From: Haliotis cracherodii
Lineage: Eukaryota
DNA: 64,000 nt
Assembly (NCBI RefSeq): GCF_022045235.1
Contig: NW_027266308.1
Location: forward strand, 53,382,001 to 53,446,000
Direction of reading: 5' to 3'
Shown piece by piece: positions 8,601-64,000 of the stretch (position 1 is the stretch's first letter; each line of letters begins with the position of its first letter). The notes below the pieces were generated by a model. It saw nothing but the letters and a program-made list of their open reading frames with translations, was not told where the DNA came from and did not search any database. The position numbers were made by a program, and so were the translations under genes.

Positions 8601-8854
8601 GTGTGAATACCAGACACTTCGTCAGTGAGTGCGTTGTAGACGATGTGGTGTCTGGGTATATGGAGGACGCAAGGGGGTTGTCGACGGAGTCGTGGTCCGT
8701 CACTGAAGATACTATAAAGTCGCTATTTAAATAAATATTCTATTGAGAGAGAACAGCCCTTTAGGGCGGAAGTACTTTCAGTCCGCCTCAATGCCGCTAT
8801 TGTTTTCAGATAAATGGCAGTGAGTACATATAAAACATATAAAAACACTTTAAG

Positions 8855-15404: not shown

Positions 15405-15570
15405 NNNNNNNNNNNNNNNNNNNNNNNNNNNNNNNNNNNNNNNNNNNNNNNNNNNNNNNNNNNNNNNNNNNNNNNNNNNNNNNNNNNNNNNNNNNNNNNN
15501 NNNNNNNNNNNNNNNNNNNNNNNNNNNNNNNNNNNNNNNNNNNNNNNNNNNNNNNNNNNNNNNNNNNNNN
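15405..15570. other. Assembly gap (166 N)
   Basis: Run of N. Confidence 1.
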
Positions 15571-30394: not shown

Positions 30395-32152
30395 TAATGT
30401 GTTTCCGAGAGGGGCGAAGGTGGTCTGTGCAACCTAAGAGGGGGGTTTTAGGGGTTGCTTATATAGAATTTGGGAATTTTGAGATTTGGAATAGATGCCG
30501 ATGGGATTGGGGAGGAGAACTAAGGGAGCTGGGTATGGTGGATGTTTGTTTGTTTATGTGATTTTGATTTGGTAGGTTATTGTGTTTTTAGATGCGTTTT
30601 ATTAGTTCCGTTTTTATTAAGAATACGCCTAAGGCCTTGAAGTTTTCTAGTTTATTTTGTGGGTTTAGTATTTCTTCTAGAGTTAGAGCCTTGTTTAGAT
30701 TGAGGGTGGTTTGTAATGCGGTTCGATGTGTTAGGTAGTGTGTGCAGTGGATGAGTGCGTGTTCTGGGGTTTCTGGTTGTTTGCAGTGTGGGCAGTTACC
30801 TGTAGTGTGTTTTTTAATTTTTTTTAGGTGGTTATTTAGGTTGGTGTGTCCTGTTTGGAGTTTAGTGATTACTCTGTCGATTTTTTTGGATGGATGGAGA
30901 ATTTTTGGTTTGGTTAGTGGTTTGCTGAGCACTTTTTTGATTTGGCTATTTGAGTTTAGATATAGGTTGTGCCATTTTTGTGTGATTTTTTGTTTGTTTA
31001 CACTTTTAATTTCTGATTTTGAGATGGGTAAGTTTAAGCTTATTTCTGGGATTTTGAGGGATAGTTTAGCTGCTTTATCGGCGTTTTCATTACCGTATAT
31101 TCCTACGTGGGCGGGTATCCACAAGAAGGTTATTTGTTTGCCTGCCTTAGTTAGGTCGTTGGAGCTTTTAAGTATTTGATTTATTAATTTAGGTCGGTTT
31201 TTGGTATTTTTGTTTTGGAGGGCTTGCAGTCCACTTAGGGAGTCGGTAAGTATTAGGATTTTTTGTGTTTTTTGGATTCTTGATTATGGAGGGCTGAGGC
31301 CATGCCCATTAGTTCTGCCGTGAATATTGATTGGTTATTTGGGAGTCGGAAGGATTGTGTGGTTTTAGTTGGTTGTGTGGTATGGACTCCGAAACCTGTG
31401 TGTTTGGAGGTCGGATTTGAGGATCCGTCCGTGTAAATGTGACACCAACTTGGCCAATGTTCGTGTATGTATGCTAGTGTGGTAGTTTTAGCTATTTTTG
31501 GGTCGGTTTGTTTATTTATTTGGCTAGCTAGTGTTGTGTCTATTTTGGGTATTTTAAGTTTAGGGGTGAAGATATTTGTGTTAATGCCTGGCCCTTCCAC
31601 ACACTATAAGGATTCCTCGCTAGGATTTGTAAATGTTTTGTCCCTGTTTGTTAATGAAATTGTCCCACAAAACAAGATGGACATTTAAACGTAGTGTCCA
31701 CACAGATGTGCTACGTAGGGCGGCCTCTTTGATGTAGGTGTAAAGTTTTGACAGGTAAGTGAGTACACGCTCACCTGGCGGAGGCTACTTTAATGTACCG
31801 CTACCTCGTCGACGACTGCTACCGTTTTAATTAGGTAAACAAAGATATGGTTCTTATTGCTGTGAAAACAATCAAGATGTTTCAACTTAAACAGCATGGC
31901 GGCTATACATGAAGAAAGAATTCCTGATTATTAACAACACAGACGTAGGGAGTAATGAGTGGGTGGTGTATGGTGGTTGACTTAAAAGAAGCCCGATGGT
32001 CATGGTACGGGTATAAAGTCGAAAACTTCCATCCTTGAGTCATCAGTCAAAGAGCTGCCCTAATCGAAACCAGCAAGACTTGTCACCGAGACCATCTTCA
32101 CATTTCGAGCATTTTCTCTTTTAAAAGTATTCTATACAATTACCACATTAAA

Positions 32153-32989
32153 ATGAAAGTGAAGAGCCCCGAAACCAAGCCAAGCAAGTGCACCGCCAAC
32201 AAGACAATCGTTCCGGCAAGGAACAGGATCAAGTACTCTGCTAGTCAGGTAAACATTTAATTGCTCGAAACGTCAATAGGAAGAAAACATAAACTTTTGT
32301 TATTTCAAAAGTAAATCGCAATACAAATTTAACACGTTTTCATCTCCACTATCCATATCCACAGTTGAGGGAACTGGAGAAGGTATTCGTGTCCTCTCAG
32401 TATCCTGACAGCTCCATCTTGGAGGATCTCTCCAACACCATCAACATCGACGTAGAGAGACTATCGGTAGGTAAATCCTCTTTATTAAACTTAACAGAAG
32501 TTCTCGAAAGAGATAATTGATCGCACAATACACAATATCATAGTGATATAAAAATCAAAGTAAGTACACACCAAGTTAGTTTCACAGGCGTGTAGTGGGC
32601 TCTTATTAGCTTCAACACAATAGCATGTCTCGGACTAACAACAATCTCTTCTCTTCTTCAGCCTCCACTACCTACCCAGCACTGGACCCGGCTGCTCCTC
32701 AGTGACGGACTACGACCACGTCTACAACCCCCTGATGTATCCATCATCACACAACGTCTACAGCGCACTCACTGACGCAGTATCCTGTACACGGCCTACC
32801 CAGAATACTCTCCACTACCCACATCTGATGACGGAAACATCCTTCCAAGTCACACCATGCCAGCAACAGTGGACAGAGTATTCCAACCAGTCCAACTTCA
32901 GCTCTCCCGGAACTCCATACTACCAGAATTATATACCCCACTTCAACTTCCTAAGTGATCAGATGACATTTCCCCAGATGGGCGTCTAG
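32153..32989 (+). pseudogene. Homeobox copy 1: exon 3 (recognition helix WFQNRR) removed by a ~385-bp deletion
   Basis: Exon 1 (32153-32248) and exon 2 (32365-32466) are intact; junction gatataaaaatcaaagtaag at ~32550 skips the end of intron 2 and nearly all of exon 3; splicing exon 2 to exon 4 would frameshift. Confidence 0.88.
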
Positions 32990-34167
32990 AACCTTCGGGG
33001 ATGTATTCGTGGCCAGACGAAGCACGAGGGCGTAATTTGTGCAATATGCACTGCAGTCCAATGTTCAACTCATCTTGGGCCTGCTTTGTTACTATTAATG
33101 TATATATTGTTGTGTTTACGTTATGGATTGCAACTGTCATTTGAAGAGGACTGTGTAAATGTTTCTGAGATAATAAACATTATCTGAAAACTATCATTTC
33201 CTGTTCTTATGAAACACGCATTTTCCCACTTTCATGTAAACCACGATTACAAATATCTTACTGATAAACAAAGGATCCTAAACAGGCGAATCTTGGATTC
33301 GAACACATGATTGGTGGATGTTGGTTGGACTAAGAGACAAACCTCTGCACCGTTCAAATGAATCTGCTTGAAGGAAACTTTTATTGTGAAATTTAACCGT
33401 TCTTTAGGTTGTGTGATATGAAATATAAAGCATTGTATAAATCATTTTTAGCAAAGCTACCCTCACAGGTATAGATCCTCACCTCCTTGGAAACATGTGT
33501 GTTGCAACTGCGACAGATATCCTGCTTTGCTCAGGTCACATTTAAGAGTGTTGTGGTTACATATGTTCCATCGTATATAGGTAATAACTAAAACATTAAA
33601 TGAAGCTATGTTTTCACACACTATAAGGATTCCTCGCTAGGGTTGTAAATGTTTTGTCCCTGTTTGTTTATGAAATTGTCCCACAAAACAAGATGGACAT
33701 TTAAACGTAGTGTCCACACAGGTGTGCTACGTAGGGCGGCCTCTTTGATGTAGGTGTAAAGTTTTGACAGGTAAGTGAGTACACGCTCACCTGGCGGAGG
33801 CTACTTTAATGTACCGCTACCTCGTCGACGACTGCTACCGTTTTAATTAGGTAAACAAAGATATAGTTCTTATTGCTGTGAAAACAATCAAGATGTTTCA
33901 ACTTAAACAGCATGGCGGCTATACATGAAGAAAGAATTCCTGATTATTAACAACACAGACGTGGGAGTAATGAGTGGGTGGTGTATGGTGGTTGACTTAA
34001 AAGAAGCCCGATGGTCATGGTACGGGTATAAAGTCGAAAACTTCCATCCTTGAGTCATCAGTCATAGAGCTGCCCTAATCGAAACCAGCAAGACTTGTCA
34101 CCGAGACCATCTTCACATTTCGAGCATTTTCTCTTTTAAAAGTATTCTATACAATTACCACACTATA

Positions 34168-34905
34168 ATGAAAGTGAAGAGCCCCGAAACCAAGCCAAGC
34201 AAGTGCACCGTCAACAAGACAATCGTTTCGGCAAGGAACAGAATCAAGTACTCTGCTAGTCAGGTAAACATTTAATTGCTCGAAACGTCAATAGGAAGAA
34301 AACATAAACTATTGTTATTTCAAAAGTAAATCGCAATACAAATCTCTCCAACACCATCAACATCGACGTAGAGAGACTATCGGTAGGTAAATCCTCTTTA
34401 TTAAACTTAACAGAAGTTCTCGAAAGAGATAATTGATCGCACAATACACAATATCATAGTGATATAAAAATCAAAGTAAGTACACACCAAGTTAGTTTCA
34501 CAGGCGTGTAGTGGGCTCTTATTAGCTTCAACACAATAGCATGTCTCGGACTAACAACAATCTCTTCTCTTCTTCAGCCTCCACTACCTACCCAGCACTG
34601 GACCCGGCTGCTCCTCAGTGACGGACTACGACCACGTCTACAACCCCCTGATGTATCCATCATCACACAACGTCTACAGCGCACTCACTGACGCAGTATC
34701 CTGTACACGGCCTACCCAGAATACTCTCCACTACCCACATCTGATGACGGAAACATCCTTCCAAGTCACACCATGCCAGCAACAGTGGACAGAGTATTCC
34801 AACCAGTCCAACTTCAGCTCTCCCGGAACTCCATACTACCAGAATTATATACCCCACTTCAACTTCCTAAGTGATCAGATGACATTTCCCCAGATGGGCG
34901 TCTAG
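34168..34905 (+). pseudogene. Homeobox copy 2: same exon-3 deletion plus a 99-bp deletion removing the exon-2 acceptor and most of exon 2
   Basis: Junction caatacaaat|ctctccaac at ~34343; distance from ATG to the exon-4 GTG is 450 versus 549 in copy 1 and 938 in intact copy 3. Confidence 0.88.
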
Positions 34906-36654
34906 AACCTTCGGGGATGTATTCGTGGCCAGACGAAGCACGAGGGCGTAATTTGTGCAATATGCACTGCAGTCCAATGTTCAACTCATCTTGGGCCTGC
35001 TTTGTTACTATTAATGTATATATTGTTGTGTTTACGTTATGGATTGCAACTGTCATTTGAAGAGGACTGTGTAAATGTTTCTGAGATAATAAACATTATC
35101 TGAAAACTATCATTTCCTGTTCTTATGAAACACGCATTTTCCCACTTTCATGTAAACCACGATTACAAATATCTTACTGATAAACAAAGGATCCTAAACA
35201 GGCGAATCTTGGATTCGAACACATGATTGGTGGATGTTGGTTGGACTAAGAGACAAACCTCTGCACCGTTCAAATGAATCTGCTTGAAGGAAACTTTTAT
35301 TGTGAAATTTAACCGTTCTTTAGGTTGTGTGATATGAAATATAAAGCATTGTATAAATCATTTTTAGCAAAGCTACCCTCACAGGTATAGATCCTCACCT
35401 CCTTGGAAACATGTGTGTTGCAACTGCGACAGATATCCTGCTTTGCTCAGGTCACATTTAAGAGTGTTGTGGTTACATATGTTCCATCGTATATAGGTAA
35501 TAACTAAAACATTAAATGAAGCTATGTTTTCAAGGCTTGAATGATACATTTGGCATCAAATAACACTCATGTTAAACTTTGAAGCTGCTCAGTTACGGTC
35601 AATGTGATATCCCGATCTATGCCTGTAAGGTATTATCAACAACTTTCGTATGCACTTGTAATCGCCATGTTGCGTATAGGAGCCAAACCTTCATGCTGAC
35701 GTTATCGGATTATCGGGCGCTTCCTTTGGATACCATTGTCTTAAGCAGATGTCGACACAATTTACCGTCTGGGAGCGTAAAACATATATACATGCATAAG
35801 GCGTGTCGGACAAACCAATTACGTCAATCAGTACTGTACATACATTATATACCACTAGTTCAAACCATTCATTATTTCATATGGCGAGAGATACAGACTG
35901 GTAAACGGGAAATTTACCCATAGGGTGACCCTTGTATTGCAGAAAAGCCAAGCAAGTAATGGTACAGCAATCACAGTTTAAGGTGTCATTTACAGGTATT
36001 TGGATTATTACCACGAAAAAGTACATGGCAATAGTTTCAACAGTTTTAAAAATAGTTTGCCAAATCAATACTGACATTAATTTCTTCATAACCATCATTT
36101 AGGATCCGATTTTCTATCATAATACCATATGGATCTTCCAAATGTTATATATCAATTTATTTATGTGTCAGTTTAGGTATGTAATGTGTATTTTATTATC
36201 ATATTGTGAGGCGCTAAATATACAGGTGAGGAACATCAAACGTCCCATGAACTACTTGAACCTTACCCCTCTATAAATTGTAAATATAGTTGCTGAGTTT
36301 TCAGCTTCATGTTGGTTGTGAGACTTCATTAAATATTAAGTACCAAAAACGTCTCTACACTATGGTGGCAGCCAACTTCTACTAATATTTCGATCAAATG
36401 ATAATATACCTTACGTCGGAATATATGCATCGGAATATATAGAATCTGAGCGTGATCTTGAAATAGCTTGGCACATCCGTTCAGTTAGCATAGAGTAAAA
36501 TATTTTGAAGTTAATAAAGTGAAATATAAATAGCTACAAAGAGAAAAGTAATTTTTACGTGTTATCGGTGGTTATGATGAACATGTAACTTGAAAATTGC
36601 AAGGTTTTTACCAAACCTAAAATTCTTAAGAGAGGCGGGTAAAGACAATAAAAT

Positions 36655-37110
36655 AAACTTTCCATATTCATATTAAGAATTTGTGTCAAACACACACTCG
36701 ATTGTATAATTCCGACCATATCATGAGTATGTTTCCATTAGTCGCCATCAAATAGTGATGATACCAGATGTTGGCGAAAAGGCGAGCGTATCCGGCTCCG
36801 CTATTTCCCCAGTTGCACCCCGTCACAAACACATGCAAAACCAAGGCAATTGTTCACCCGAAAAAAAACAACGGAACAAGTTAAAAAGGGAACTGTATCA
36901 AGCATCATTTGGTCACTGGTGCGTCAAATTTGGAAATGTCATCCACATGTCTACCACAAAAGCTTTAAAAGCTTTATGTTGTAACTAAGAACACTCTTTG
37001 AAATCATCGTGGAAAGAGCTTGCTCGAGTGAACCTCAAAAGTTGTGAAATGTAGACAACTGGGAACCATTTTTCTTGGCTCACGACATATATACGCCTTA
37101 TTTCTTTTGA
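36655..37110 (-). mobile_element. Penelope-like 3' remnant carried in the spacer of every full array unit
   Basis: Homologous to 8100-8560 (atcaaatagt.atgatacca..tgtt.gcgaaaa...ccccgtcacaaacac...cacatgtcta); repeats at each unit period. Confidence 0.65.
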
Positions 37111-37755
37111 ACAAATACATGATCATCGAGATTTTTCTGTATCCTCTTATTCCAAAGATGTTCAATTATATAATGGATATGCGTTTCAAGCTTATTACGA
37201 GCATAACTGTTTCACACAATAACAAATAAGTCATCCTTGTGAAGACTACGGTACTGTTAATGTTTGTTTGTTTGTTGTTTAACGCCGCACTCGGCAATAT
37301 TCCAGCTATATGACGACGGTTATTGTTAATGCCTGGCCCTTCCACACACTATAAGGATTCCTCGCTAGGATTTGTAAATGTTTTGTCCCTGTTTGTTTAT
37401 GAAATTGTCCCACAAAACAAGATGGACATTTAAACGTAGTGTCCACACAGGTGTGCTACGTAGGGCGGCCTCTTTGATGTAGGTGTAAAGTTTTGACAGG
37501 TAAGTGAGTACACGCTCACCTGGCGGAGGCTACTTTAATGTACCGCTACCTCGTCGACGACTGCTACCGTTTTAATTAGGTAAACAAAGATATAGTTCTT
37601 ATTGCTGTGAAAACAATCAAGATGTTTCAACTTAAACAGCATGGCGGCTATACATGAAGAAAGAATTCCTGATTATTAACAACACAGACGTGGGAGTAAT
37701 GAGTGGGTGGTGTATGGTGGTTGACTTAAAAGAAGCCCGATGGTCATGGTACGGG

Positions 37756-37792
37756 TATAAAGTCGAAAACTTCCATCCTTGAGTCATCAGTC
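37756..37792 (+). promoter_or_regulatory. Core promoter of the homeobox gene (TATA box plus initiator), present in each unit
   Basis: TATAAAG at 37756-37762 and an Inr-like TCATCAGTC with A at 37786/37789 (30-33 bp downstream); the ATG follows ~110 bp later with no intervening ATG seen. Confidence 0.65.
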
Positions 37793-37896
37793 ATAGAGCT
37801 GCCCTAATCGAAACCAGCAAGACTTGTCACCGAGACCATCTTCACATTTCGAGCATTTTCTCTTTTAAAAGTATTCTATACAATTACCACACTATA

Positions 37897-39122
37897 ATGA
37901 AAGTGAAGAGCCCCGAAACCAAGCCAAGCAAGTGCACCGTCAACAAGACAATCGTTTCGGCAAGGAACAGAATCAAGTACTCTGCTAGTCAGGTAAACAT
38001 TTAATTGCTCGAAACGTCAATAGGAAGAAAACATAAACTATTGTTATTTCAAAAGTAAATCGCAATACAAATTTAACACGTTTTCATCTCCACTATCCAT
38101 ATCCACAGTTGAGGCAACTGGAGAAGGTATTCGTGTCCTCTCAGTATCCTGACAGCTCCATCTTGGAGGATCTCTCCAACACCATCAACATCGACGTAGA
38201 GAGACTATCGGTAGGTAAATCCTCTTTATTAAACTTAACAGAAGTTCTCGAAAGAGATAATTGATCGCACAATACACAATATCATAGTGATATAAAACTC
38301 TCTTTCTTGTCCCCTTAAATGTACATAGGACCCATGAAATGTACTGAAGTGAAATTCTCATTTTTACTGCTTTATTCAGTTTATATGGTAGACTTAAAGA
38401 ATTGTTGGATATTTCATTTCATAATCTTTTCAACCCATATAATAGACCCTGATTTCATTAAATGTCTCGATAATAATGACCTCTCTCTGCCATACAGATC
38501 TGGTTCCAGAACCGCCGTTCCAAGTTCAAGCGTCAGTCTAAAGGTGCTCACGTGAACTGGATGAGACAGCAACTGTATCAACAAGGAACATCACGGTCAC
38601 GTGACATAACGGCTACGGACAAGTGTCACGTGCTCACACCACCAACGACTTCCAAGAAAGATGACGTGAAAGACAAACCCAAATCAAAGTAAGTACACAC
38701 CAAGTTAGTTTCACAGGCGTGTAGTGGGCTCTTATTAGCTTCAACACAATGGCATGTCTGTCTCGGACTAACAACAATCTCTTCTCTTCTTCAGCCTCCA
38801 CTACCTACCCAGCACTGGACCCGGCTGCTCTTCAGTGACGGACTACGACCACGTCTACAACCCCCTGATGTACCCATCATCACACAACGTCTACAGCGCA
38901 CTCAGTGACGCAGTATCCTGTACACGGCCTACCCAGAATACTCTCCACTACCCACATCTGATGACGGAAACATCCTTCCAAGTCACACCATGCCAGCAAC
39001 AGTGGACAGAGTATTCCAACCAGTCCAACTTCAGCTCTCCCGGAACTCCATACTACCAGAATTATATACCCCACTTCAACTTCCTAAGTGATCAGATGAC
39101 ATTTCCCCAGATGGGCGTCTAG
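37897..39122 (+). CDS. PRD-class-like Q50 homeobox protein, copy 3 (intact, 238 aa); exons 37897-37992, 38109-38210, 38498-38688, 38795-39122
   Basis: GT-AG introns (phases 0, 0, 2) give an open frame. Homeodomain SARNRIKYSASQ|LRQLEKVFVSSQYPDSSILEDLSNTINIDVERLS|IWFQNRRSKFKRQS with R5, L16, F20, Y25-P26, W48-F49-Q50-N51, R53; intron between codons 46/47 is typical of PRD class. Confidence 0.92.
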
Positions 39123-39304
39123 AACCTTCGGGGATGTATTCGTGGCCAGACGAAGCACGAGGGCGTAATTTGTGCAATATGCACTGCAGTCCAATGTTGA
39201 ACTCATCTTGGGCCTGCTTTGTTACTATTAATGTATATATTGTTGTGTTTACGTTATGGATTGCAACTGTCATTTGAAAAGGACTGTGTAAATGTTTCTG
39301 AGAT

Positions 39305-39310
39305 AATAAA
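39305..39310 (+). terminator. Probable polyadenylation signal AATAAA of the homeobox gene (present in every unit)
   Basis: AATAAA ~180 bp after the TAG, followed by a T-rich element. Confidence 0.55.
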
Positions 39311-42113: not shown

Positions 42114-43339
42114 ATGAAAGTGAAGAGCCCCGAAACCAAGCCAAGCAAGTGCACCGTCAACAAGACAATCGTTTCGGCAAGGAACAGAATCAAGTACTCT
42201 GCTAGTCAGGTAAACATTTAATTGCTCGAAACGTCAATAGGAAGAAAACATAAACTATTGTTATTTCAAAAGTAAATCGCAATACAAATTTAACACGTTT
42301 TCATCTCCACTATCCATATCCACAGTTGAGGCAACTGGAGAAGGTATTCGTGTCCTCTCAGTATCCTGACAGCTCCATCTTGGAGGATCTCTCCAACACC
42401 ATCAACATCGACGTAGAGAGACTATCGGTAGGTAAATCCTCTTTATTAAACTTAACAGAAGTTCTCGAAAGAGATAATTGATCGCACAATACACAATATC
42501 ATAGTGATATAAAACTCTCTTTCTTGTCCCCTTAAATGTACATAGGACCCATGAAATGTACTGAAGTGAAATTCTCATTTTTACTGCTTTATTCAGTTTA
42601 TATGGTAGACTTAAAGAATTGTTGGATATTTCATTTCATAATCTTTTCAACCCATATAATAGACCCTGATTTCATTAAATGTCTCGATAATAATGACCTC
42701 TCTCTGCCATACAGATCTGGTTCCAGAACCGCCGTTCCAAGTTCAAGCGTCAGTCTAAAGGTGCTCACGTGAACTGGATGAGACAGCAACTGTATCAACA
42801 AGGAACATCACGGTCACGTGACATAACGGCTACGGACAAGTGTCACGTGCTCACACCACCAACGACTTCCAAGAAAGATGACGTGAAAGACAAACCCAAA
42901 TCAAAGTAAGTACACACCAAGTTAGTTTCACCTGCGTGTAGTGGGCTCTTATTAGCTTCAACACAATGGCATGTCTGTCTCGGACTAACAACAATCTCTT
43001 CTCTTCTTCAGCCTCCACTACCTACCCAGCACTGGACCCGGCTGCTCTTCAGTGACGGACTACGACCACGTCTACAACCCCCTGATGTACCCATCATCAC
43101 ACAACGTCTACAGCGCACTCAGTGACGCAGTATCCTGTACACGGCCTACCCAGAATACTCTCCACTACCCACATCTGATGACGGAAACATCCTTCCAAGT
43201 CACACCATGCCAGCAACAGTGGACAGAGTATTCCAACCAGTCCAACTTCAGCTCTCCCGGAACTCCATACTACCAGAATTATATACCCCACTTCAACTTC
43301 CTAAGTGATCAGATGACATTTCCCCAGATGGGCGTCTAG
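42114..43339 (+). CDS. PRD-class-like homeobox protein, copy 4 (intact); exons 42114-42209, 42326-42427, 42715-42905, 43012-43339
   Basis: Same splice sites and protein as copy 3. Confidence 0.92.
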
Positions 43340-49299: not shown

Positions 49300-49573
49300 A
49301 ACCATAATAACCTACCAAATCAAAATCACATAAACAAACAATCATCCACCATACCCAGCTCCCTTAGTTCTCCTCCCCAACCCCATCAGCATCTATTCCA
49401 AATCTCAAAATTCCCAAATTCTATATAAGCAACCCCTAAAGCCCCCTCTTGGGTTGCACAGACCACCCTCGCCCCTTTCGGAAACACATTAAATGGCCGG
49501 GCCGGGCCCGTGTGCGAAATACGCATCAGTCGGAAAGCGCACGTTAAATCTCCAAAGTAAGTAAGTAAGTAAG
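46217..49573 (+). mobile_element. 5'-truncated RNase H-containing LINE (I-group: I/Nimb/Ingi-like), 3357 bp
   Basis: TSD tcctt at 46212-46216 and 49574-49578; (TAAG)n tail; absent from the other units; lacks ORF1 and the APE endonuclease. Confidence 0.95.
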
Positions 49574-49694
49574 TCCTTGAGTCATCAGTCATAGAGCTGC
49601 CCTAATCGAAACCAGCAAGACTTGTCACCGAGACCATCTTCACATTTCGAGCATTTTCTCTTTTAAAAGTATTCTATACAATTACCACACTATA

Positions 49695-53904: not shown

Positions 53905-55121
53905 ATGAAAGTGAAGAGCCCCGAAACCAAGCCAAGCAAGTGCACCGTCAACAAGACAATCGTTCCGGCAAGGAACAGAATCAAGTACTCTGCTAGTCAG
54001 GTAAACATTTAATTGCTCGAAACGTCAATAGGAAGAAAACATAAACTATTGTTATTTCAAAAGTAAATCGCAATACAAATTTAACACGTTTTCATCTCCA
54101 CTATCCATATCCACAGTTGAGGGAACTGGAGAAGGTATTCGTGTCCTCTCAGTATCCTGACAGCTCCATCTTGGAGGATCTCTCCAACACCATCAACATC
54201 GACGTAGAGAGACTATCGGTAGGTAAATTACACTTAACAGAAGTTCTCGAAAGAGATAATTGATCGCACAATACACAATATCATAGTGATATAAAACTCT
54301 CTTTCTTGTCCCCTTAAATGTACATAGGACCCATGAAATGTACTGAAGTGAAATTCTCATTTTTACTGCTTTATTCAGTTTATATGGTAGACTTAAAGAA
54401 TTGTTGTATATTTCCTTTCATAATCTTTTCAACCCATATAATAGACCCTGATTTCATTAAATGTCTCGATAATAATGACCTCTTTCTGCCATACAGATCT
54501 GGTTCCAGAACCGCCGTTCCAAGTTCAAGCGTCAGTCTAAAGGTGCTCACGTGAACTGGATGAGACAGCAACTGTATCAACAAGGAACATCACGGTCACG
54601 TGACGTAACGGCTACGGAGGAATGTCACGTGCTCACACCACCAACGACTTCCAAGAAAGATGACGTGAAAGACAAACCCAAATCAAAGTAAGTACACACC
54701 AAGTTAGTTTCACCTGCGTGTAGTGGGCTCTTATTAGCTTCAACACAATGGCATGTCTGTCTCGGACTAACAACAATCTCTTCTCTTCTTCAGCCTCCAC
54801 TACCTACCCAGCACTGGACCCGGCTGCTCTTCAGTGACGGACTACGACCCCGTCTACAACCCCCTGATGTATCCATCATCACACAACGTCTACAGCGCAC
54901 TCACTGACGCAGTATCCTGTACACGGCCTACCCAGAATACTCTCCACTACCCACATCTGATGACGGAAACATCCTTCCAAGTCACACCATGCCAGCAACA
55001 GTGGACAGAGTATTCCAACCAGTCCAACTTCAGCTCTCCCGGAACTCCATACTACCAGAATTATATACCCCACTTCAACTTCCTAAGTGATCAGATGACA
55101 TTTCCCCAGATAGGCGTCTAG
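53905..55121 (+). CDS. PRD-class-like homeobox protein, copy 6 (intact); exons 53905-54000, 54117-54218, 54497-54687, 54794-55121
   Basis: Same structure as copy 5 at +4210. Confidence 0.92.
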
Positions 55122-58114
55122 AACCTTCGGGGATGTATTCGTGGCCAGACGAAGCACGAGGGCGTAATTTGTGCAATATGCACTGCAGTCCAATGTTGAA
55201 CTCATCTTGGGCCTGCTTTGTTGTTACTATTAATGTATATATTGTTGTGTTTACGTTATGGATTGCAACTGTCATTTGAAGAGGACTGTGTAAATGTTTC
55301 TGAGATAATAAACATTATCTGAAAACTATCATTTCCTGTTCTTATGAAACACGCATTTTCCCACTTTCATGTAAACCACGATTACAAATATCTTACTGAT
55401 AAACAAAGGATCCTAAACAGGCGAATCTTGGATTCGAACACATGATTGGTGGATGTTGGTTGGACTAAGAGACAAACCTCTGCACCGTTCAAATGAATCT
55501 GCTTGAAGGAAACTTTTATTGTGAAATTTAACCGTTCTTTAGGTTGTGTGATATGAAATATAAAGCATTGTATAAATCATTTTTAGCAAAGCTACCCTCA
55601 CAGGTATAGATCCTCACCTCCTTGGAAACATGTGTGTTGCAACTGCGACAGATATCCTGCTTTGCTCAGGTCACATTTAAGAGTGTTGTGGTTACATATG
55701 TTCCATCGTATATAGGTAATAACTAAAACATTAAATGAAGCTATGTTTTCAAGGCTTGAATGATACATTTGGCATCAAATAACACTCATGTTAAACTTTG
55801 AAGCTGCTCAGTTACGGTCAATGTGATATCCCGATCTATGCCTGTAAGGTATTATCAACAACTTTCGTATGCACTTGTAATCGCCATGTTGCGTATAGGA
55901 GCCAAACCTTCATGCTGACGTTATCGGATTATCGGGCGCTTCCTTTGGATACCATTGTCTTAAGCAGATGTCGACACAAGTTACCGCCTGGGAGCGTAAA
56001 ACATATATACATGTATAAGGCGTGTCGGACAAACCAATTACGTCAATCAGTACTGTACATACATTATATACCACTAGTTCAAACCATTCATTATTTCATA
56101 TGGCGAGAGATACAGACTGGTAAACGGGAAATTTACCCATAGGGTGACCCTTGTATTGCAGAAAAGCCAAGCAAGTAATGGTACAGCAATCACAGTTTAA
56201 GGTGTCATTTACAGGTATTTGGATTATTACCACGAAAAAGTACATGGCAATAGTTTCAACAGTTTTAAAAATAGTTTGCCAAATCAATACTGACATTAAT
56301 TTCTTCATAACCATCATTTAGGATCCGATTTTCTATCATAATACCATATGCATCTTCCAAATGTTATATATCAATTTATTTATGTGTCAGTTTAGGTATG
56401 TAATGTGTATTTTATTATCATATTGTGAGGCGCTAAATATACAGGTGAGGAACATCAAACGTCCCATGAAATACTTGAACCTTGTCCCTCTATAAATTGT
56501 AAATATAGTTGCTGACTTTTCAGTTTCATGTTGGTTGTGAGTCTTCATTAAATATTAAGTCCAAAAACGTCTCTACACTATGGTGGCAGCCAACTTCTAC
56601 TAATATTTCGATCAAATGATAATATACCTTACGTCGGAATATATGCCTCGGAATATATAGAATCTGAGCGTGATCTTGAAATAGCTTGGCACATCCGTTC
56701 AGTTAGCATAGAGTAACATATTTTGAAGTTAATAAAGTGAAATATAAATAGCTACAAAGAGAAAAGTAATTTTTACGTGTTATCGGTGGTTATGATGGAC
56801 ACGTAACTTGAAAATTGCAAGGTTTTTACCAAACCTAAAATTCTTAAGAGAGGCGGGTAAAGACAATAAAATAAACTTTCCATATTCATATTAAGAATTT
56901 GTGTCAAACACACACTCGATTGTATAATTCCGACCATATCATGAGTATGTTTCCATTAGTCGCCATCAAATAGTGATGATACCAGATGTTGGCGAAAAGG
57001 CGAGCGTATCCGGCCCCGCTATTTCCCCGGTTACACCCCGTCACAAACACATGCAAAACCAAGGCAATTGTTCACCCGGGAAAAAAAAGGGAACAAGTTA
57101 AAAAGGGAACTGTATCAAGCATCATTTGGTCACTGATGCGTCAAATTTGGAAATGTCATCCACATGTCTACCACAAAACGTTTTAAAAGCTTTATGTTGT
57201 AACTAAGAACACTCTTTGAAATCATCGTGGAAAGAGCTTGCTCGAGTGTACCTCAGAAGTTGTGAAATGTAGACAACTGGGAACCATTTTTCTTGGCTCA
57301 CGACATATATACGCCTTATTTCTTTTGAACAAATACATGATCATCGAGATTTTTCTGTATCCTCTTATTCCAAAGATGTTCAATTATATAATGGATATGC
57401 GTTTCAAGCTTATTACGAGCATAACTGTTTCACACAATAACAAATAAGTTATCCTTGTGAAGACTACGGTGTTGTTAATGTTTGTTTGTTTGTTGTTTAA
57501 CGCCGCACTCGGCAATATTCCAGCTATATGACGACGGTTATTGTTAATGCCTGGCCCTTCCACACACTATAAGGATTCCTCGCTAGGATTTGTAAATGTT
57601 TTGTCCCTGTTTGTTAATGAAATTGTCCCACAAAACAAGATGGACATTTAAACGTAGTGTCCACACATATGTGCTACGTAGGGCGGCCTCTTTGATGTAG
57701 GTGTAAAGTTTTGACAGGTAAGTGAGTACACGCTCACCTGGCGGAGGCTACTTTAATGTACCGCTACCTCGTCGACGACTGCTACCGTTTTAATTAGGTA
57801 AACAAAGATATAGTTCTTATTGCTGTGAAAACAATCAAGATGTTTCAACTTAAACAGCATGGCGGCTATACATGAAGAAAGAATTCCTGATTATTAACAA
57901 CACAGACGTGGGAGTAATGAGTGGGTGGTGTATGGTGGTTGACTTAAAAGAAGCCCGATGGTCATGGTACGGGTATAAAGTCGAAAACTTCCATCCTTGA
58001 GTCATCAGTCATAGAGCTGCCCTAATCGAAACCAGCAAGACTTGTCACCGAGACCATCTTCACATTTCGAGCATTTTCTCTTTTAAAAGTATTCTATACA
58101 ATTACCACACTATA

Positions 58115-59331
58115 ATGAAAGTGAAGAGCCCCGAAACCAAGCCAAGCAAGTGCACCGTCAACAAGACAATCGTTCCGGCAAGGAACAGAATCAAGTACTC
58201 TGCTAGTCAGGTAAACATTTAATTGCTCGAAACGTCAATAGGAAGAAAACATAAACTATTGTTATTTCAAAAGTAAATCGCAATACAAATTTAACACGTT
58301 TTCATCTCCACTATCCATATCCACAGTTGAGGCAACTGGAGAAGGTATTCGTGTCCTCTCAGTATCCTGACAGCTCCATCTTGGAGGATCTCTCCAACAC
58401 CATCAACATCGACGTAGAGAGACTATCGGTAGGTAAATTACACTTAACAGAAGTTCTCGAAAGAGATAATTGATCGCACAATACACAATATCATAGTGAT
58501 ATAAAACTCTCTTTCTTGTCCCCTTAAATGTACATAGGACCCATGAAATGTACTGAAGTGAAATTCTCATTTTTACTGCTTTATTCAGTTTATATGGTAG
58601 ACTTAAAGAATTGTTGGATATTTCCTTTCATAATCTTTTCAACCCATATAATAGACCCTGATTTCATTAAATGTCTCGATAATAATGACCTCTTTCTGCC
58701 ATACAGATCTGGTTCCAGAACCGCCGTTCCAAGTTCAAGCGTCAGTCTAAAGGTGCTCACGTGAACTGGATGAGACAGCAACTGTATCAACAAGGAACAT
58801 CACGGTCACGTGACGTAACGGCTACGGAGGAATGTCACGTGCTCACACCACCAACGACTTCCAAGAAAGATGACGTGAAAGACAAACCCAAATCAAAGTA
58901 AGTACACACCAAGTTAGTTTCACCTGCGTGTAGTGGGCTCTTATTAGCTTCAACACAATGGCATGTCTGTCTCGGACTAACAACAATCTCTTCTCTTCTT
59001 CAGCCTCCACTACCTACCCAGCACTGGACCCGGCTGCTCTTCAGTGACGGACTACGACCCCGTCTACAACCCCCTGATGTATCCATCATCACACAACGTC
59101 TACAGCGCACTCACTGACGCAGTATCCTGTACACGGCCTACCCAGAATACTCTCCACTACCCACATCTGATGACGGAAACATCCTTCCAAGTCACACCAT
59201 GCCAGCAACAGTGGACAGAGTATTCCAACCAGTCCAACTTCAGCTCTCCCGGAACTCCATACTACCAGAATTATATACCCCACTTCAACTTCCTAAGTGA
59301 TCAGATGACATTTCCCCAAATAGGCGTCTAG
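58115..59331 (+). CDS. PRD-class-like homeobox protein, copy 7 (intact); exons 58115-58210, 58327-58428, 58707-58897, 59004-59331
   Basis: Same structure; carries the type-A Q at homeodomain position 15 on a type-B background. Confidence 0.92.
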
Positions 59332-62324
59332 AACCTTCGGGGATGTATTCGTGGCCAGACGAAGCACGAGGGCGTAATTTGTGCAATATGCACTGCAGTC
59401 CAATGTTGAACTCATCTTGGGCCTGCTTTGTTGTTACTATTAATGTATATATTGTTGTGTTTACGTTATGGATTGCAACTGTCATTTGAAGAGGACTGTG
59501 TAAATGTTTCTGAGATAATAAACATTATCTGAAAACTATCATTTCCTGTTCTTATGAAACACGCATTTTCCCACTTTCATGTAAACCACGATTACAAATA
59601 TCTTACTGATAAACAAAGGATCCTAAACAGGCGAATCTTGGATTCGAACACATGATTGGTGGATGTTGGTTGGACTAAGAGACAAACCTCTGCACCGTTC
59701 AAATGAATCTGCTTGAAGGAAACTTTTATTGTGAAATTTAACCGTTCTTTAGGTTGTGTGATATGAAATATAAAGCATTGTATAAATCATTTTTAGCAAA
59801 GCTACCCTCACAGGTATAGATCCTCACCTCCTTGGAAACATGTGTGTTGCAACTGCGACAGATATCCTGCTTTGCTCAGGTCACATTTAAGAGTGTTGTG
59901 GTTACATATGTTCCATCGTATATAGGTAATAACTAAAACATTAAATGAAGCTATGTTTTCAAGGCTTGAATGATACATTTGGCATCAAATAACACTCATG
60001 TTAAACTTTGAAGCTGCTCAGTTACGGTCAATGTGATATCCCGATCTATGCCTGTAAGGTATTATCAACAACTTTCGTATGCACTTGTAATCGCCATGTT
60101 GCGTATAGGAGCCAAACCTTCATGCTGACGTTATCGGATTATCGGGCGCTTCCTTTGGATACCATTGTCTTAAGCAGATGTCGACACAAGTTACCGCCTG
60201 GGAGCGTAAAACATATATACATGTATAAGGCGTGTCGGACAAACCAATTACGTCAATCAGTACTGTACATACATTATATACCACTAGTTCAAACCATTCA
60301 TTATTTCATATGGCGAGAGATACAGACTGGTAAACGGGAAATTTACCCATAGGGTGACCCTTGTATTGCAGAAAAGCCAAGCAAGTAATGGTACAGCAAT
60401 CACAGTTTAAGGTGTCATTTACAGGTATTTAGATTATTACCACGAAAAAGTACATGGCAATAGTTTCAACAGTTTTAAAAATAGTTTGCCAAATCAATAC
60501 TGACATTAATTTCTTCATAACCATCATTTAGGATCCGATTTTCTATCATAATACCATATGCATCTTCCAAATGTTATATATCAATTTATTTATGTGTCAG
60601 TTTAGGTATGTAATGTGTATTTTATTATCATATTGTGAGGCGCTAAATATACAGGTGAGGAACATCAAACGTCCCATGAAATACTTGAACCTTGTCCCTC
60701 TATAAATTGTAAATATAGTTGCTGACTTTTCAGTTTCATGTTGGTTGTGAGTCTTCATTAAATATTAAGTCCAAAAACGTCTCTACACTATGGTGGCAGC
60801 CAACTTCTACTAATATTTCGATCAAATGATAATATACCTTACGTCGGAATATATGCCTCGGAATATATAGAATCTGAGCGTGATCTTGAAATAGCTTGGC
60901 ACATCCGTTCAGTTAGCATAGAGTAACATATTTTGAAGTTAATAAAGTGAAATATAAATAGCTACAAAGAGAAAAGTAATTTTTACGTGTTATCGGTGGT
61001 TATGATGGACACGTAACTTGAAAATTGCAAGGTTTTTACCAAACCTAAAATTCTTAAGAGAGGCGGGTAAAGACAATAAAATAAACTTTCCATATTCATA
61101 TTAAGAATTTGTGTCAAACACACACTCGATTGTATAATTCCGACCATATCATGAGTATGTTTCCATTAGTCGCCATCAAATAGTGATGATACCAGATGTT
61201 GGCGAAAAGGCGAGCGTATCCGGCCCCGCTATTTCCCCGGTTACACCCCGTCACAAACACATGCAAAACCAAGGCAATTGTTCACCCGGGAAAAAAAAGG
61301 GAACAAGTTAAAATGGGAACTGTATCAAGCATCATTTGGTCACTGATGCGTCAAATTTGGAAATGTCATCCACATGTCTACCACAAAACGTTTTAAAAGC
61401 TTTATGTTGTAACTAAGAACACTCTTTGAAATCATCGTGGAAAGAGCTTGCTCGAGTGTACCTCAGAAGTTGTGAAATGTAGACAACTGGGAACCATTTT
61501 TCTTGGCTCACGACATATATACGCCTTATTTCTTTTGAACAAATACATGATCATCGAGATTTTTCTGTATCCTCTTATTCCAAAGATGTTCAATTATATA
61601 ATGGATATGCGTTTCAAGCTTATTACGAGCATAACTGTTTCACACAATAACAAATAAGTTATCCTTGTGAAGACTACGGTGTTGTTAATGTTTGTTTGTT
61701 TGTTGTTTAACGCCGCACTCGGCAATATTCCAGCTATATGACGACGGTTATTGTTAATGCCTGGCCCTTCCACACACTATAAGGATTCCTCGCTAGGATT
61801 TGTAAATGTTTTGTCCCTGTTTGTTAATGAAATTGTCCCACAAAACAAGATGGACATTTAAACGTAGTGTCCACACATATGTGCTACGTAGGGCGGCCTC
61901 TTTGATGTAGGTGTAAAGTTTTGACAGGTAAGTGAGTACACGCTCACCTGGCGGAGGCTACTTTAATGTACCGCTACCTCGTCGACGACTGCTACCGTTT
62001 TAATTAGGTAAACAAAGATATAGTTCTTATTGCTGTGAAAACAATCAAGATGTTTCAACTTAAACAGCATGGCGGCTATACATGAAGAAAGAATTCCTGA
62101 TTATTAACAACACAGACGTGGGAGTAATGAGTGGGTGGTGTATGGTGGTTGACTTAAAAGAAGCCCGATGGTCATGGTACGGGTATAAAGTCGAAAACTT
62201 CCATCCTTGAGTCATCAGTCATAGAGCTGCCCTAATCGAAACCAGCAAGACTTGTCACCGAGACCATCTTCACATTTCGAGCATTTTCTCTTTTAAAAGT
62301 ATTCTATACAATTACCACACTATA

Positions 62325-63541
62325 ATGAAAGTGAAGAGCCCCGAAACCAAGCCAAGCAAGTGCACCGTCAACAAGACAATCGTTCCGGCAAGGAACAGAA
62401 TCAAGTACTCTGCTAGTCAGGTAAACATTTAATTGCTCGAAACGTCAATAGGAAGAAAACATAAACTATTGTTATTTCAAAAGTAAATCGCAATACAAAT
62501 TTAACACGTTTTCATCTCCACTATCCATATCCACAGTTGAGGGAACTGGAGAAGGTATTCGTGTCCTCTCAGTATCCTGACAGCTCCATCTTGGAGGATC
62601 TCTCCAACACCATCAACATCGACGTAGAGAGACTATCGGTAGGTAAATTACACTTAACAGAAGTTCTCGAAAGAGATAATTGATCGCACAATACACAATA
62701 TCATAGTGATATAAAACTCTCTTTCTTGTCCCCTTAAATGTACATAGGACCCATGAAATGTACTGAAGTGAAATTCTCATTTTTACTGCTTTATTCAGTT
62801 TATATGGTAGACTTAAAGAATTGTTGTATATTTCCTTTCATAATCTTTTCAACCCATATAATAGACCCTGATTTCATTAAATGTCTCGATAATAATGACC
62901 TCTTTCTGCCATACAGATCTGGTTCCAGAACCGCCGTTCCAAGTTCAAGCGTCAGTCTAAAGGTGCTCACGTGAACTGGATGAGACAGCAACTGTATCAA
63001 CAAGGAACATCACGGTCACGTGACGTAACGGCTACGGAGGAATGTCACGTGCTCACACCACCAACGACTTCCAAGAAAGATGACGTGAAAGACAAACCCA
63101 AATCAAAGTAAGTACACACCAAGTTAGTTTCACCTGCGTGTAGTGGGCTCTTATTAGCTTCAACACAATGGCATGTCTGTCTCGGACTAACAACAATCTC
63201 TTCTCTTCTTCAGCCTCCACTACCTACCCAGCACTGGACCCGGCTGCTCTTCAGTGACGGACTACGACCCCGTCTACAACCCCCTGATGTATCCATCATC
63301 ACACAACGTCTACAGCGCACTCACTGACGCAGTATCCTGTACACGGCCTACCCAGAATACTCTCCACTACCCACATCTGATGACGGAAACATCCTTCCAA
63401 GTCACACCATGCCAGCAACAGTGGACAGAGTATTCCAACCAGTCCAACTTCAGCTCTCCCGGAACTCCATACTACCAGAATTATATACCCCACTTCAACT
63501 TCCTAAGTGATCAGATGACATTTCCCCAAATAGGCGTCTAG
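62325..63541 (+). CDS. PRD-class-like homeobox protein, copy 8 (intact); exons 62325-62420, 62537-62638, 62917-63107, 63214-63541
   Basis: Same structure as copy 6 at +8420. Confidence 0.92.
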
Positions 63542-64000
63542 AACCTTCGGGGATGTATTCGTGGCCAGACGAAGCACGAGGGCGTAATTTGTGCAATATG
63601 CACTGCAGTCCAATGTTGAACTCATCTTGGGCCTGCTTTGTTGTTACTATTAATGTATATATTGTTGTGTTTACGTTATGGATTGCAACTGTCATTTGAA
63701 GAGGACTGTGTAAATGTTTCTGAGATAATAAACATTATCTGAAAACTATCATTTCCTGTTCTTATGAAACACGCATTTTCCCACTTTCATGTAAACCACG
63801 ATTACAAATATCTTACTGATAAACAAAGGATCCTAAACAGGCGAATCTTGGATTCGAACACATGATTGGTGGATGTTGGTTGGACTAAGAGACAAACCTC
63901 TGCACCGTTCAAATGAATCTGCTTAAAGGAAACTTTTATTGTGAAATTTAACCGTTCTTTAGGTTGTGTGATATGAAATATAAAGCATTGTATAAATCAT

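What the first reader, a model, noticed from the sequence alone, without database searches (positions are those of the whole stretch)
31579..64000. Hidden homeobox-gene macrosatellite: a DUX4/D4Z4-like tandem array in an invertebrate
Seen: a ~4.21-kb unit repeats head to tail up to the window edge. Manual splicing of each unit gives a complete transcription unit (TATA/Inr, 4 exons, AATAAA) encoding a 238-aa homeodomain protein. Six copies are intact and nearly identical. The ORF track shows only the last exon, so annotation or repeat masking could easily miss the gene. Known: in mammals, PRD-class DUX4/Dux genes lie in macrosatellites and act in a brief burst at zygotic genome activation, and lineage-specific PRD genes with early embryonic expression have been reported in oyster. 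Inference: this may be an independently evolved, dosage-amplified early-embryo or germline transcription factor array. Unlike the DUX4 ORF, it keeps its introns, so it was amplified at the DNA level rather than as a retrogene. I know of no description of such an array in molluscs, but I cannot search.
Basis: partly seen in the sequence, partly recalled or inferred. Interest (0 to 1): 0.92.

Follow-up and report, generated by a model that had tools for sequence, protein, structure and literature searches.

The report
Abalone tandem array of PRD-V homeobox genes
The black abalone genome carries a real head-to-tail array of nine intact copies of a small paired-like homeobox gene. The copies are already annotated in RefSeq. 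The gene is the counterpart of the oyster gene PRD4, which is active from egg to blastula, so the array is a good but untested candidate for an early-embryo regulator.

Summary
**Observation: confirmed.**
- A 4.21-kb unit repeats head to tail from window 31579, past the window end, to about 13.2 kb beyond it.
- The array holds 2 decayed units and 9 intact units, 6 of them inside the window. The first unit is split by an 8.5-kb nested transposon.
- Each intact unit has TATA, Inr, four GT-AG exons and AATAAA, and encodes 238 aa with a 60-aa Q50 paired-like homeodomain.

**Identity.**
- The window is Haliotis cracherodii.
- The nine genes match RefSeq XP_071080775 to XP_071080783 letter for letter and in order, so the gene is not hidden.
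- Multi-copy sets are also annotated in H. rufescens, H. asinina and H. rubra. Copies group by species, which fits concerted evolution or separate expansions.
- The family is the known "PRD Clade V" (subgroup A). Its Lottia member is Lg_PRD-V_A1 and its oyster member is Cgi_PRD4, reported as expressed from egg to blastula.

**DUX4/D4Z4 comparison.** It holds only as an analogy. This gene has one homeodomain, keeps its introns and was amplified as DNA. Sea-urchin hbox12/pmar1/micro1 is an invertebrate precedent.

**Gaps.** I found no paper describing this array.

**Earlier notes.** The scan noted this homeodomain twice before, both times on this same window and not on other DNA.

The parts
22911..23043 (+). 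5' piece of the first array unit (unit positions 1211-1343), cut off from the rest by a nested transposon insertion
23044..31578 (.). Nested transposable-element insertion that splits the first unit. It contains one 1841-aa ORF (24156-29681, +) with a DUF6589 match.
   Evidence: unit similarity resumes at 31579
31579..33616 (+). Decayed unit 1: exons 1, 2 and 4 are present, and a 384-bp deletion removes exon 3
33612..35990 (+). Decayed unit 2: exons 1 and 4 are present, exon 2 is partial and exon 3 is absent
35991..40207 (+). Unit 3, intact gene with CDS 37897-39122 (= XP_071080775/776 sequence)
40208..44427 (+). Unit 4, intact gene with CDS 42114-43339
44428..51999 (+). Unit 5, intact CDS 49695-50911 (= XP_071080777), but its core promoter is split by a LINE
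46217..49573 (+). 5'-truncated non-LTR retrotransposon (RT + RNase H). It has a (TAAG)n tail and a 4-5 bp target-site duplication, and sits between the TATA box and the Inr of unit 5.
52000..56209 (+). Unit 6, used as the reference unit
53764..53799 (+). Core promoter: TATAAA 53764-53769 and TCAGT initiator 53795-53799, 28-33 bp apart. The TATA block is matched exactly in 10 of the 11 units and the initiator block in 9 of 11.
   Evidence: sequence motifs; the transcription start was not mapped
53905..54000 (+). Exon 1: Met to homeodomain position 12 (32 codons, phase 0)
54117..54218 (+). Exon 2: homeodomain positions 13-46 (34 codons). Pfam PF00046 E = 9.5e-5 on this exon alone.
54497..54687 (+). 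Exon 3: homeodomain positions 47-60 (IWFQNRRSKFKRQ), then the HVNWMRQQLY and HVLTPP motifs. It ends in phase 2.
54794..55121 (+). Exon 4: completes the split Asn codon, then the LHYLP motif, an S/T/P/Y/Q-rich tail predicted to be disordered, and the stop codon
55307..55312 (+). AATAAA polyadenylation signal, present in all 11 units
52660..53066 (.). Interspersed repeat inside the spacer. Many copies occur genome-wide at 70-80% identity.
56210..60419 (+). Unit 7, intact gene with CDS 58115-59331 (= XP_071080779)
60420..64000 (+). Unit 8 (runs to 64629 beyond the window), intact gene with CDS 62325-63541. Units 9-11 and a diverged single-copy paralog (XP_071080784) follow outside the window.
8613..12875 (-). 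Degenerate exon-3-like and exon-4-like fragments of the same family on the opposite strand, with stops and frame breaks: old pseudogene debris

Best explanation
What is shown.
- This is a genuine tandem gene array on Haliotis cracherodii chromosome-scale contig C45.
- It has nine intact and at least two decayed 4.2-kb units.
- Each intact unit is a complete small transcription unit of about 1.5 kb, with introns of 116, 278 and 106 bp.
- The gene encodes a 238-aa paired-like, Q50, single-homeodomain protein of the mollusc-wide 'PRD Clade V, subgroup A' family, the group that contains oyster PRD4.

What I infer about origin.
- The array arose by DNA-level tandem duplication of a local gene. A diverged paralog with the same exon structure lies directly 3' of it.
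- It is kept homogeneous by unequal crossing-over or gene conversion.

What I infer about the protein.
- It binds TAAT-type sites through a canonical three-helix homeodomain.
- The recognition helix is predicted to extend into the conserved WMR motif.
- The disordered S/T/P/Y/Q-rich tail would act on transcription.

What I infer about function (not shown).
- The many identical short units with TATA and Inr promoters give a high transcript dose in a short time.
- By orthology with oyster PRD4 (egg to blastula), the most likely time is cleavage to blastula.
For: Array and gene model.

Homeodomain and class.
- PF00046 E = 2.3e-16 on the H. rubra ortholog.
- The 25 best PDB matches are all PRD-class homeodomains.
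- The intron lies at homeodomain position 46/47.

Family.
- The Lottia homologs P0021 and P0041 are identical to Lg_PRD-V_A1 and Lg_PRD-V_A2 of Barton-Owen 2018.
- Oyster homologs share the Cg_PRD4 homeodomain plus the HV.WMR.Q, HVLSPP and SNLHY.P motifs.
- Strong hits come from molluscs only.

Constraint. dN/dS between the array gene and its two paralogs is 0.29-0.31 overall and 0.14-0.18 in the homeodomain. All nine ORFs and 27 intron boundaries are intact.

Other Haliotis. Multi-copy sets are annotated in H. rufescens (at least 6), H. asinina (at least 11) and H. rubra (3), and copies group by species.

Unequal crossing-over signature. Neighbouring units differ by 0.07-0.14% and the edge unit by 2.1-2.8%.

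Early expression of the oyster clade member: Paps et al. 2015, PMC5322547.

Fold: three helices with pLDDT above 90, helix 3 spanning residues 62-93, tail below 50.
Against: - Stage, tissue and even transcription are inferred.
- Among the nine copies there are 13 nonsynonymous and 7 synonymous differences, and coding DNA varies as much as introns. Selection on each individual copy is therefore not shown.
- One copy has its core promoter split by a LINE. Two copies are decayed, and pseudogene debris lies upstream.
- The promoters of the array gene and its two paralogs share no detectable similarity, so the expression of relatives may not transfer.
- All H. asinina RefSeq models lack homeodomain residues 47-50 (IWFQ). 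If real, that would abolish DNA binding in that species.
- Paps et al. mention PRD4 only briefly, and the oyster gene is not known to be amplified.
Confidence: 0.55

Rival explanations
1. The array is a nearly neutral copy-number expansion. Unequal crossing-over amplified an ordinary, low-dose developmental gene. One or a few copies do the work at some larval or adult stage, and the rest are redundant passengers on their way to decay.
For: - There is no purifying-selection signal among copies: 13 nonsynonymous against 7 synonymous differences, and exons vary as much as introns.
- Two units are decayed, one promoter is disrupted, and older pseudogene fragments lie upstream.
- Most other novel oyster PRD genes peak late rather than early (Paps 2015).
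Against: - Multi-copy sets are annotated in four Haliotis species, including the distant H. asinina.
- All nine ORFs and every splice site are intact.
- Every complete unit keeps TATA, Inr and AATAAA.
- The closest oyster relative is one of the two novel PRD genes reported as early.
Confidence: 0.3
2. The copies are an assembly artefact: haplotypes or reads of one or two real copies stacked into a false array.
Against: - Units differ in a structured way, 0.07-2.8%, with a gradient towards the edges.
- Individual units carry private events: a LINE with a target-site duplication, deletions, and 3-10 bp indels.
- Independent assemblies of three other species also hold several copies on the homologous chromosome-sized contigs of about 67-68 Mb.
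Confidence: 0.03
3. The array encodes a non-DNA-binding or dominant-negative homeodomain product. Transcripts would use the alternative AG 12 nt inside exon 3 (ttccag|AAC), which removes I47-W48-F49-Q50, as in every H. asinina RefSeq model.
For: - All seven distinct H. asinina array proteins lack IWFQ.
- The H. cracherodii sequence holds both AGs in frame, 12 nt apart.
Against: - RefSeq models of H. cracherodii, H. rufescens and H. rubra, and of every other mollusc homolog, keep IWFQ.
- W48, F49 and N51 are nearly invariant across the family.
- The H. asinina models may simply reflect the gene predictor's choice of splice site.
Confidence: 0.07

Closest known systems
PRD Clade V (Paps et al. 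2015) / PRD-V subgroup A (Barton-Owen et al. 2018): Lottia PRD-V_A1/A2 and oyster Cgi_PRD4
   Same: - Same homeodomain signature: RNR.KY..QL..LE..F..SQYPD...E.L......ER.SIWFQNRRSKFKRQS.
- Q50 and no paired domain.
- Shared motifs outside the homeodomain: HV.WMR.Q, HVLSPP and SNLHY.P.
- The Lottia homologs found here are letter-for-letter the published PRD-V_A1 and PRD-V_A2 homeodomains.
   Different: - In Lottia and Patella caerulea the RefSeq models carry consecutive locus tags on one contig, which suggests a pair of neighbouring genes.
- For oysters I found no report or sign of an array.
- In Haliotis one of three paralogs is amplified to 9 or more near-identical 4.2-kb units.
- No paper I could find describes that array.
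Human D4Z4/DUX4 and mouse Dux macrosatellites
   Same: - Kilobase-scale head-to-tail units, each holding a complete PRD-class homeobox ORF.
- Lineage-restricted.
- The homeodomain is detectably similar (DUX4 is among the best PDB matches, E about 1e-11), as expected within the PRD class.
   Different: - One homeodomain, not two.
- Three introns kept, including the PRD-typical one at position 46/47, so it is not a retrogene.
- Every unit has its own TATA, Inr and AATAAA.
- AT-rich (39% GC).
- Only about 11 units in this assembly.
- Heterochromatin, copy-number polymorphism and expression at genome activation are all untested.
Sea-urchin hbox12/pmar1/micro1 multigene family
   Same: - An invertebrate, PRD-like, intron-containing homeobox gene present in many clustered copies.
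- Copies form species-specific clades.
- Copy number is variable.
- Expression is transient in cleavage and early blastula (PMC5370098).
   Different: - A different homeobox family and phylum.
- The urchin copies are often divergently oriented or sit in two-gene clusters scattered over scaffolds, not in one regular head-to-tail array.
- Function is demonstrated in urchins but not here.
Eutherian ETCHbox, Obox and LEUTX tandem arrays (for example the rabbit LEUTX array)
   Same: - Lineage-specific PRD-like genes expanded by tandem duplication.
- Gene conversion between copies.
- Expression before or around embryonic genome activation (PMC8208926).
   Different: - Those genes derive from Crx (K50) and evolve fast.
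- The abalone gene is Q50, and its homeodomain is well conserved across molluscs.

Membership tests
PRD class, paired-like (no paired domain) | A 60-residue homeodomain that scores as Homeodomain and is closest to PRD-class members | tested here: met
   PF00046 E = 2.3e-16 on the 236-aa H. rubra ortholog, with partial hits on exons 2 and 3 of the window. The 25 best PDB matches are all PRD-class: PRRX2, DUX4, HESX1, PHOX2B, Paired, ALX4, Al, CRX, PITX2, PAX6, PAX3, GSC, OTX2.
PRD class, paired-like (no paired domain) | Intron between homeodomain positions 46 and 47. That this is typical of the PRD class rests on my own knowledge. | tested here: met
   Exon 2 ends after S46 and exon 3 starts at I47, with GT-AG boundaries in all nine copies. 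A second intron lies at position 12/13.
PRD class, paired-like (no paired domain) | Residue 50 is Q or K (S in Pax-type genes), and there is no paired domain | tested here: met
   The sequence W48-F49-Q50-N51 is present. Pfam finds no domain other than the homeodomain.
PRD Clade V / PRD-V subgroup A (oyster PRD4 group) | Homeodomain groups with the published clade members | tested here: met
   Homologs P0021 and P0041, retrieved with the abalone protein, are 60/60 identical to Lg_PRD-V_A1 and Lg_PRD-V_A2 in supplement file 12 of PMC6118893. The oyster homologs carry the Cg_PRD4 homeodomain. I did not build a tree against the complete PRD-class data set.
PRD Clade V / PRD-V subgroup A (oyster PRD4 group) | Orthology supported by sequence outside the homeodomain | tested here: met
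   W87, M88, R89, Q91, H110, L112, S129, N130, L131 and Y133 are invariant across 21 gastropod and bivalve proteins. The same motifs occur in Crassostrea, Ostrea and Saccostrea.
PRD Clade V / PRD-V subgroup A (oyster PRD4 group) | Early (egg to blastula) expression, as reported for Cgi_PRD4 | not testable with these tools
The oyster statement comes from PMC5322547.
DUX4/D4Z4-type macrosatellite | Double homeodomain protein | tested here: not met
   There is a single homeodomain, at residues 22-81.
DUX4/D4Z4-type macrosatellite | Intronless ORF of retrogene origin inside each unit | tested here: not met
   Each unit holds three introns.
DUX4/D4Z4-type macrosatellite | Kilobase-scale head-to-tail units, each with a complete homeobox ORF | tested here: met
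   The period is 4.21 kb, with nine complete ORFs.
DUX4/D4Z4-type macrosatellite | Copy-number polymorphism, repressive chromatin, and a burst of expression at genome activation | not testable with these tools
   No reads, methylation or chromatin data were available. CpG observed/expected in the array is 0.8, against 0.23-0.5 in nearby DNA, which hints at no long-term germline methylation.

The most novel reading that the evidence does not exclude
The array would be the abalone's cleavage-stage burst factor. A PRD-V/PRD4-type homeodomain protein would be made from about ten co-fired short TATA units at or just before zygotic genome activation. It would have been kept as an array throughout the genus Haliotis by concerted evolution. 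That would make it a spiralian functional counterpart of Dux, Obox and pmar1 that arose independently.
Probability: 0.3. Interest if true: 0.75.

Novelty: new member of a known kind. Interest (0 to 1): 0.5.

Why it matters
**The open question.** Regulators of zygotic genome activation and early blastomere identity in spiralians are poorly known. The candidates so far are mostly the expanded TALE (SPILE) genes.

**What this adds.**
- It is a conserved, multi-copy, short-gene array of a mollusc-specific paired-like factor.
- Its oyster counterpart is reported to be on from egg to blastula.
- That makes it a concrete candidate that can be tested in an aquaculture genus with easy access to embryos.

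**A second use.** The array is a clean natural case for studying concerted evolution of a developmental gene. It offers units of graded divergence, a dated LINE insertion, decayed edge copies, and an adjacent unamplified paralog as a control.

**A practical point.** RefSeq gives the copies inconsistent names: OTX1 B-like, Pax-6-like, PRRX2-like, CRX-like. This hides the fact that they are one family, so homeobox surveys may misfile them.

Tried and rejected

I could not check whether the units are homologous between species, compute dN/dS between species, or read the H. asinina splice acceptor.

I neither built nor submitted a joined spliced model. I searched exon by exon by reference. For full-length work I used RefSeq proteins that the tools returned, and showed they equal the exon pieces.

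**Ideas rejected or unsupported.**
- Lopx family: considered because one Patella homolog is auto-named ceh-37. Rejected, because the homeodomain matches PRD-V_A, not Lopx.
- Promoter footprinting against the two paralogs: no similarity apart from a shared interspersed repeat.
- Origin of the array by recombination between flanking copies of the spacer repeat: no such copies lie at the array edges.

**Searches that found nothing.**
- Rfam on one unit: no hit.
- A homeodomain text search in the Paps supplements: no hit.
- Literature searches for the array, for PRD4, for abalone genome activation and for six accession numbers: no description found.

**Inconclusive.** The test for selection among copies, because the copies are too similar.

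Full report
**1.

A self-comparison of the window shows a unit of 4,210-4,220 bp repeated head to tail from 31579 to the window end. TRF did not list it only because its longest period is 500.

I fetched 200 kb beyond the window. The array continues for three more units and ends, degenerating, at about 77183 in extended coordinates, 13.2 kb past the window end.

The units, in order:
- Two decayed units, 31579-33616 and 33612-35990. Both have a deletion that removes exon 3, and the second also lacks part of exon 2.
- Nine complete units.
- The fifth unit holds a 3.36-kb insertion at 46217-49573.

The true first unit starts further left. Positions 22911-23043 are 99% identical to unit positions 1211-1343, and about 8.5 kb of nested transposon follows.

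Units differ by 0.07-2.8% in substitutions. Neighbours are most alike (u3/u4 0.07%, u7/u8 0.14%) and the 3' edge unit is the most divergent. This is the pattern expected from unequal crossing-over, and it argues against an assembly artefact. So do the private indels and the LINE with its target-site duplication.

**2. The gene model**

Reading unit 6 gives:
- TATAAA at 53764-53769.
- A TCAGT initiator at 53795-53799.
- ATG at 53905.
- Exons 53905-54000, 54117-54218, 54497-54687 and 54794-55121, all with GT-AG boundaries.
- 32+34+63 codons, one split Asn codon and 108 codons: 238 in all.
- AATAAA at 55307-55312.

All nine complete units keep every splice site and an open frame.

I searched the exons separately by reference. 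Exons 2 and 3 each hit Pfam Homeodomain in part. Exon 4, searched against 1.8 billion representatives, found a 236-aa Haliotis rubra protein at 80% identity.

**3. Species and annotation**

Cluster look-ups show nine 238-aa RefSeq proteins of Haliotis cracherodii, XP_071080775 to XP_071080783. They lie on a contig of 70,628,833 bp, exactly the length of the window's contig C45.

The exon translations of units 3-11 equal these proteins piece by piece, and in accession order. The gene is therefore not hidden.

What the annotation does obscure is that the copies are one family. They are named 'OTX1 B-like', 'Pax-6-like', 'PRRX2-like' or 'cone-rod homeobox-like'.

**4. Relatives in the same genome**

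A search of the whole genome with exon 3 finds the nine copies plus only two other loci.
- One is a diverged paralog directly 3' of the array, at extended coordinates 80887-82200. It is XP_071080784, 236 aa, with the same four-exon structure.
- The other is on contig C5: XP_071096113.

Degenerate exon-3-like and exon-4-like fragments also lie on the minus strand at window 8.6-12.9 kb.

dN/dS between the array gene and the adjacent paralog is 0.29 overall and 0.14 in the homeodomain. Against the C5 paralog it is 0.31 and 0.18. The lineage has therefore been under purifying selection.

Among the nine copies themselves the signal is absent. There are 13 nonsynonymous and 7 synonymous differences, and exons vary as much as introns. 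The copies are too young or too homogenised to say more.

**5. Other abalones**

RefSeq holds:
- At least six copies in H. rufescens.
- At least eleven in H. asinina.
- Three in H. rubra.

The H. rufescens and H. asinina sets lie on contigs of about 67-68 Mb. In a protein tree the copies group by species: H. asinina 100/99, H. rubra 97/93, H. rufescens 84/93. So either an old array evolves in concert, or each lineage expanded on its own.

One oddity stands out. Every H. asinina model lacks homeodomain residues 47-50 (IWFQ). This corresponds to using a second AG 12 nt inside exon 3 (ttccag|AAC), which is also present in H. cracherodii.

**6. What family it is**

The 25 best PDB matches are all PRD-class homeodomains. 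The intron at position 46/47, Q50, and the absence of a paired domain make it paired-like.

A search with the H. rubra protein, and then with a 21-sequence profile, finds strong matches only in molluscs. These are Haliotis, Patella, Lottia, Gigantopelta, scallops, unionids, Pinctada, Mytilus, oysters, Solemya, Mercenaria, Ruditapes and Mya. Below them the scores drop sharply.

The alignment shows conserved features outside the homeodomain:
- An MKVK start.
- An HV.WMR.Q motif immediately after the homeodomain.
- HVLSPP.
- SNLHY.P at the exon 3/4 boundary.

The Lottia members are letter for letter 'Lg_PRD-V_A1' and 'Lg_PRD-V_A2' in the homeodomain alignment of Barton-Owen et al. 2018 (PMC6118893). 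The oyster members carry the 'Cg_PRD4' homeodomain and the same extra motifs.

The array gene therefore belongs to PRD Clade V of Paps et al. 2015, in the PRD4 group. It is not Lopx, which I considered and rejected.

Paps et al. state that the novel genes PRD2 and PRD4 are expressed at the earliest stages, from egg to blastula (PMC5322547).

**7. How it most likely works**

Shown:
- A canonical homeodomain. AlphaFold gives three helices with pLDDT above 90.
- Helix 3 is predicted to run on through the WMR motif to residue 93.
- The tail is predicted to be disordered.

Inferred:
- The protein binds TAAT-type sites as Q50 paired-like proteins do.
- The S/T/P/Y/Q-rich tail acts on transcription.

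Further inference about dose and timing:
- There are nine near-identical units, each about 1.5 kb from cap to poly(A), with tiny introns and a TATA plus Inr core promoter.
- That build suits a large transcript dose in a short time. It is my own knowledge that early zygotic genes in flies and fish tend to be short and TATA-driven.
- Taken together with the oyster data, a cleavage-to-blastula burst is the most likely use, at odds of about 0.3-0.4.

Points against:
- There is no abalone expression evidence.
- Promoters diverged between the paralogs.
- One copy has its promoter cut between TATA and Inr by a LINE.
- There are decayed copies.
- There is the H. asinina IWFQ problem.

CpG observed/expected in the array is 0.8, against 0.23-0.5 in nearby DNA. 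This hints that the array has not been methylated in the germline over evolutionary time. It is weak evidence.

**8. Comparison with what is known**

The DUX4/D4Z4 parallel is an analogy of architecture only. Two defining features were tested and not met: the double homeodomain and the intronless retrogene ORF.

Closer in kind are two other cases.
- The sea-urchin hbox12/pmar1/micro1 family: clustered, 6-22 copies per individual, species-specific clades, expressed in cleavage and early blastula (PMC5370098).
- The eutherian ETCHbox, LEUTX and Obox tandem expansions (PMC8208926).

I found no paper describing this abalone array. It is therefore a new member of a known kind: a mollusc case of a tandemly amplified, lineage-restricted paired-like homeobox gene.

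**9. Limits**

- The N run at 15405-15570 was left as it is.
- Earlier notes of this scan (s1-823331 and s1-823384) described the same homeodomain on this same window. The scan has not reported it on other DNA.

Noticed in passing
window 54485-54510 (and the same place in every unit); proteins P0006, P0032-P0037: Two in-frame AG acceptors lie 12 nt apart at the start of exon 3 (catacag|ATCTGGTTCCAG|AAC). All H. asinina RefSeq models use the equivalent of the downstream one, and so lack homeodomain residues I47-W48-F49-Q50. This is either a prediction artefact or a real non-DNA-binding isoform.
   Followed up: partly
window 46217-49573: A 5'-truncated LINE with an open 1069-aa reading frame (RT + RNase H), a (TAAG)n tail and a 4-5 bp target-site duplication. 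It is inserted exactly between the TATA box and the initiator of unit 5, and is a natural promoter knock-out of one copy.
   Followed up: partly
extended coordinates 81142-81243 (L002:7142-7243) against window 54117-54218: Exon 2 of the adjacent diverged paralog is 94.5% identical in DNA to the array gene, while exons 1 and 3 are about 77% identical. dS in the homeodomain is 0.31 against about 2 elsewhere. This suggests gene conversion between the array and the paralog.
   Followed up: partly
window 8613-12875, minus strand: Degenerate exon-3-like pieces (QIWFQKCRSKCQS*..., and two copies of QI*FQNRRYM...) and an exon-4-like piece of the same homeobox family, in inverted orientation. They look like remains of older duplications.
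   Followed up: partly
A TTAATTA lies at 53581. They are present in every unit, but there is no matching block in the promoters of the two paralogs, so conservation gives no support yet.
   Followed up: partly
window 23044-31578 (ORF 24156-29681, +): An 1841-aa open ORF of a large DNA-transposon-like element, with only a DUF6589 Pfam match. It is nested with LINE fragments inside the first array unit. Earlier notes call it Academ-like.
   Followed up: partly
unit positions 4017-4210 and 1-1210 (for example window 56017-57420): This 1.4-kb stretch of spacer, which contains a genome-wide interspersed repeat (unit positions 660-1066), occurs only between units and not at either outer edge of the array. 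No copy of the repeat flanks the array, so how the founding duplication arose remains unexplained.
   Followed up: partly
proteins P0042 (Mytilus galloprovincialis, 11 members) and P0052 (M. edulis, 12 members); Lottia LOTGIDRAFT_160290/160291; Patella caerulea SNE40_014563/014564: The same family seems to be duplicated in tandem in limpets (adjacent locus numbers) and may be multi-copy in mussels. Amplification of PRD-V_A genes may therefore recur in molluscs.
   Followed up: no
extended coordinates 84000-240000 (L003-L018): CpG observed/expected falls to 0.23-0.5 in much of the DNA downstream of the array, while the array and the 24 kb upstream stay at about 0.8. This is a sharp boundary between apparently germline-methylated and unmethylated domains.
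   Followed up: no
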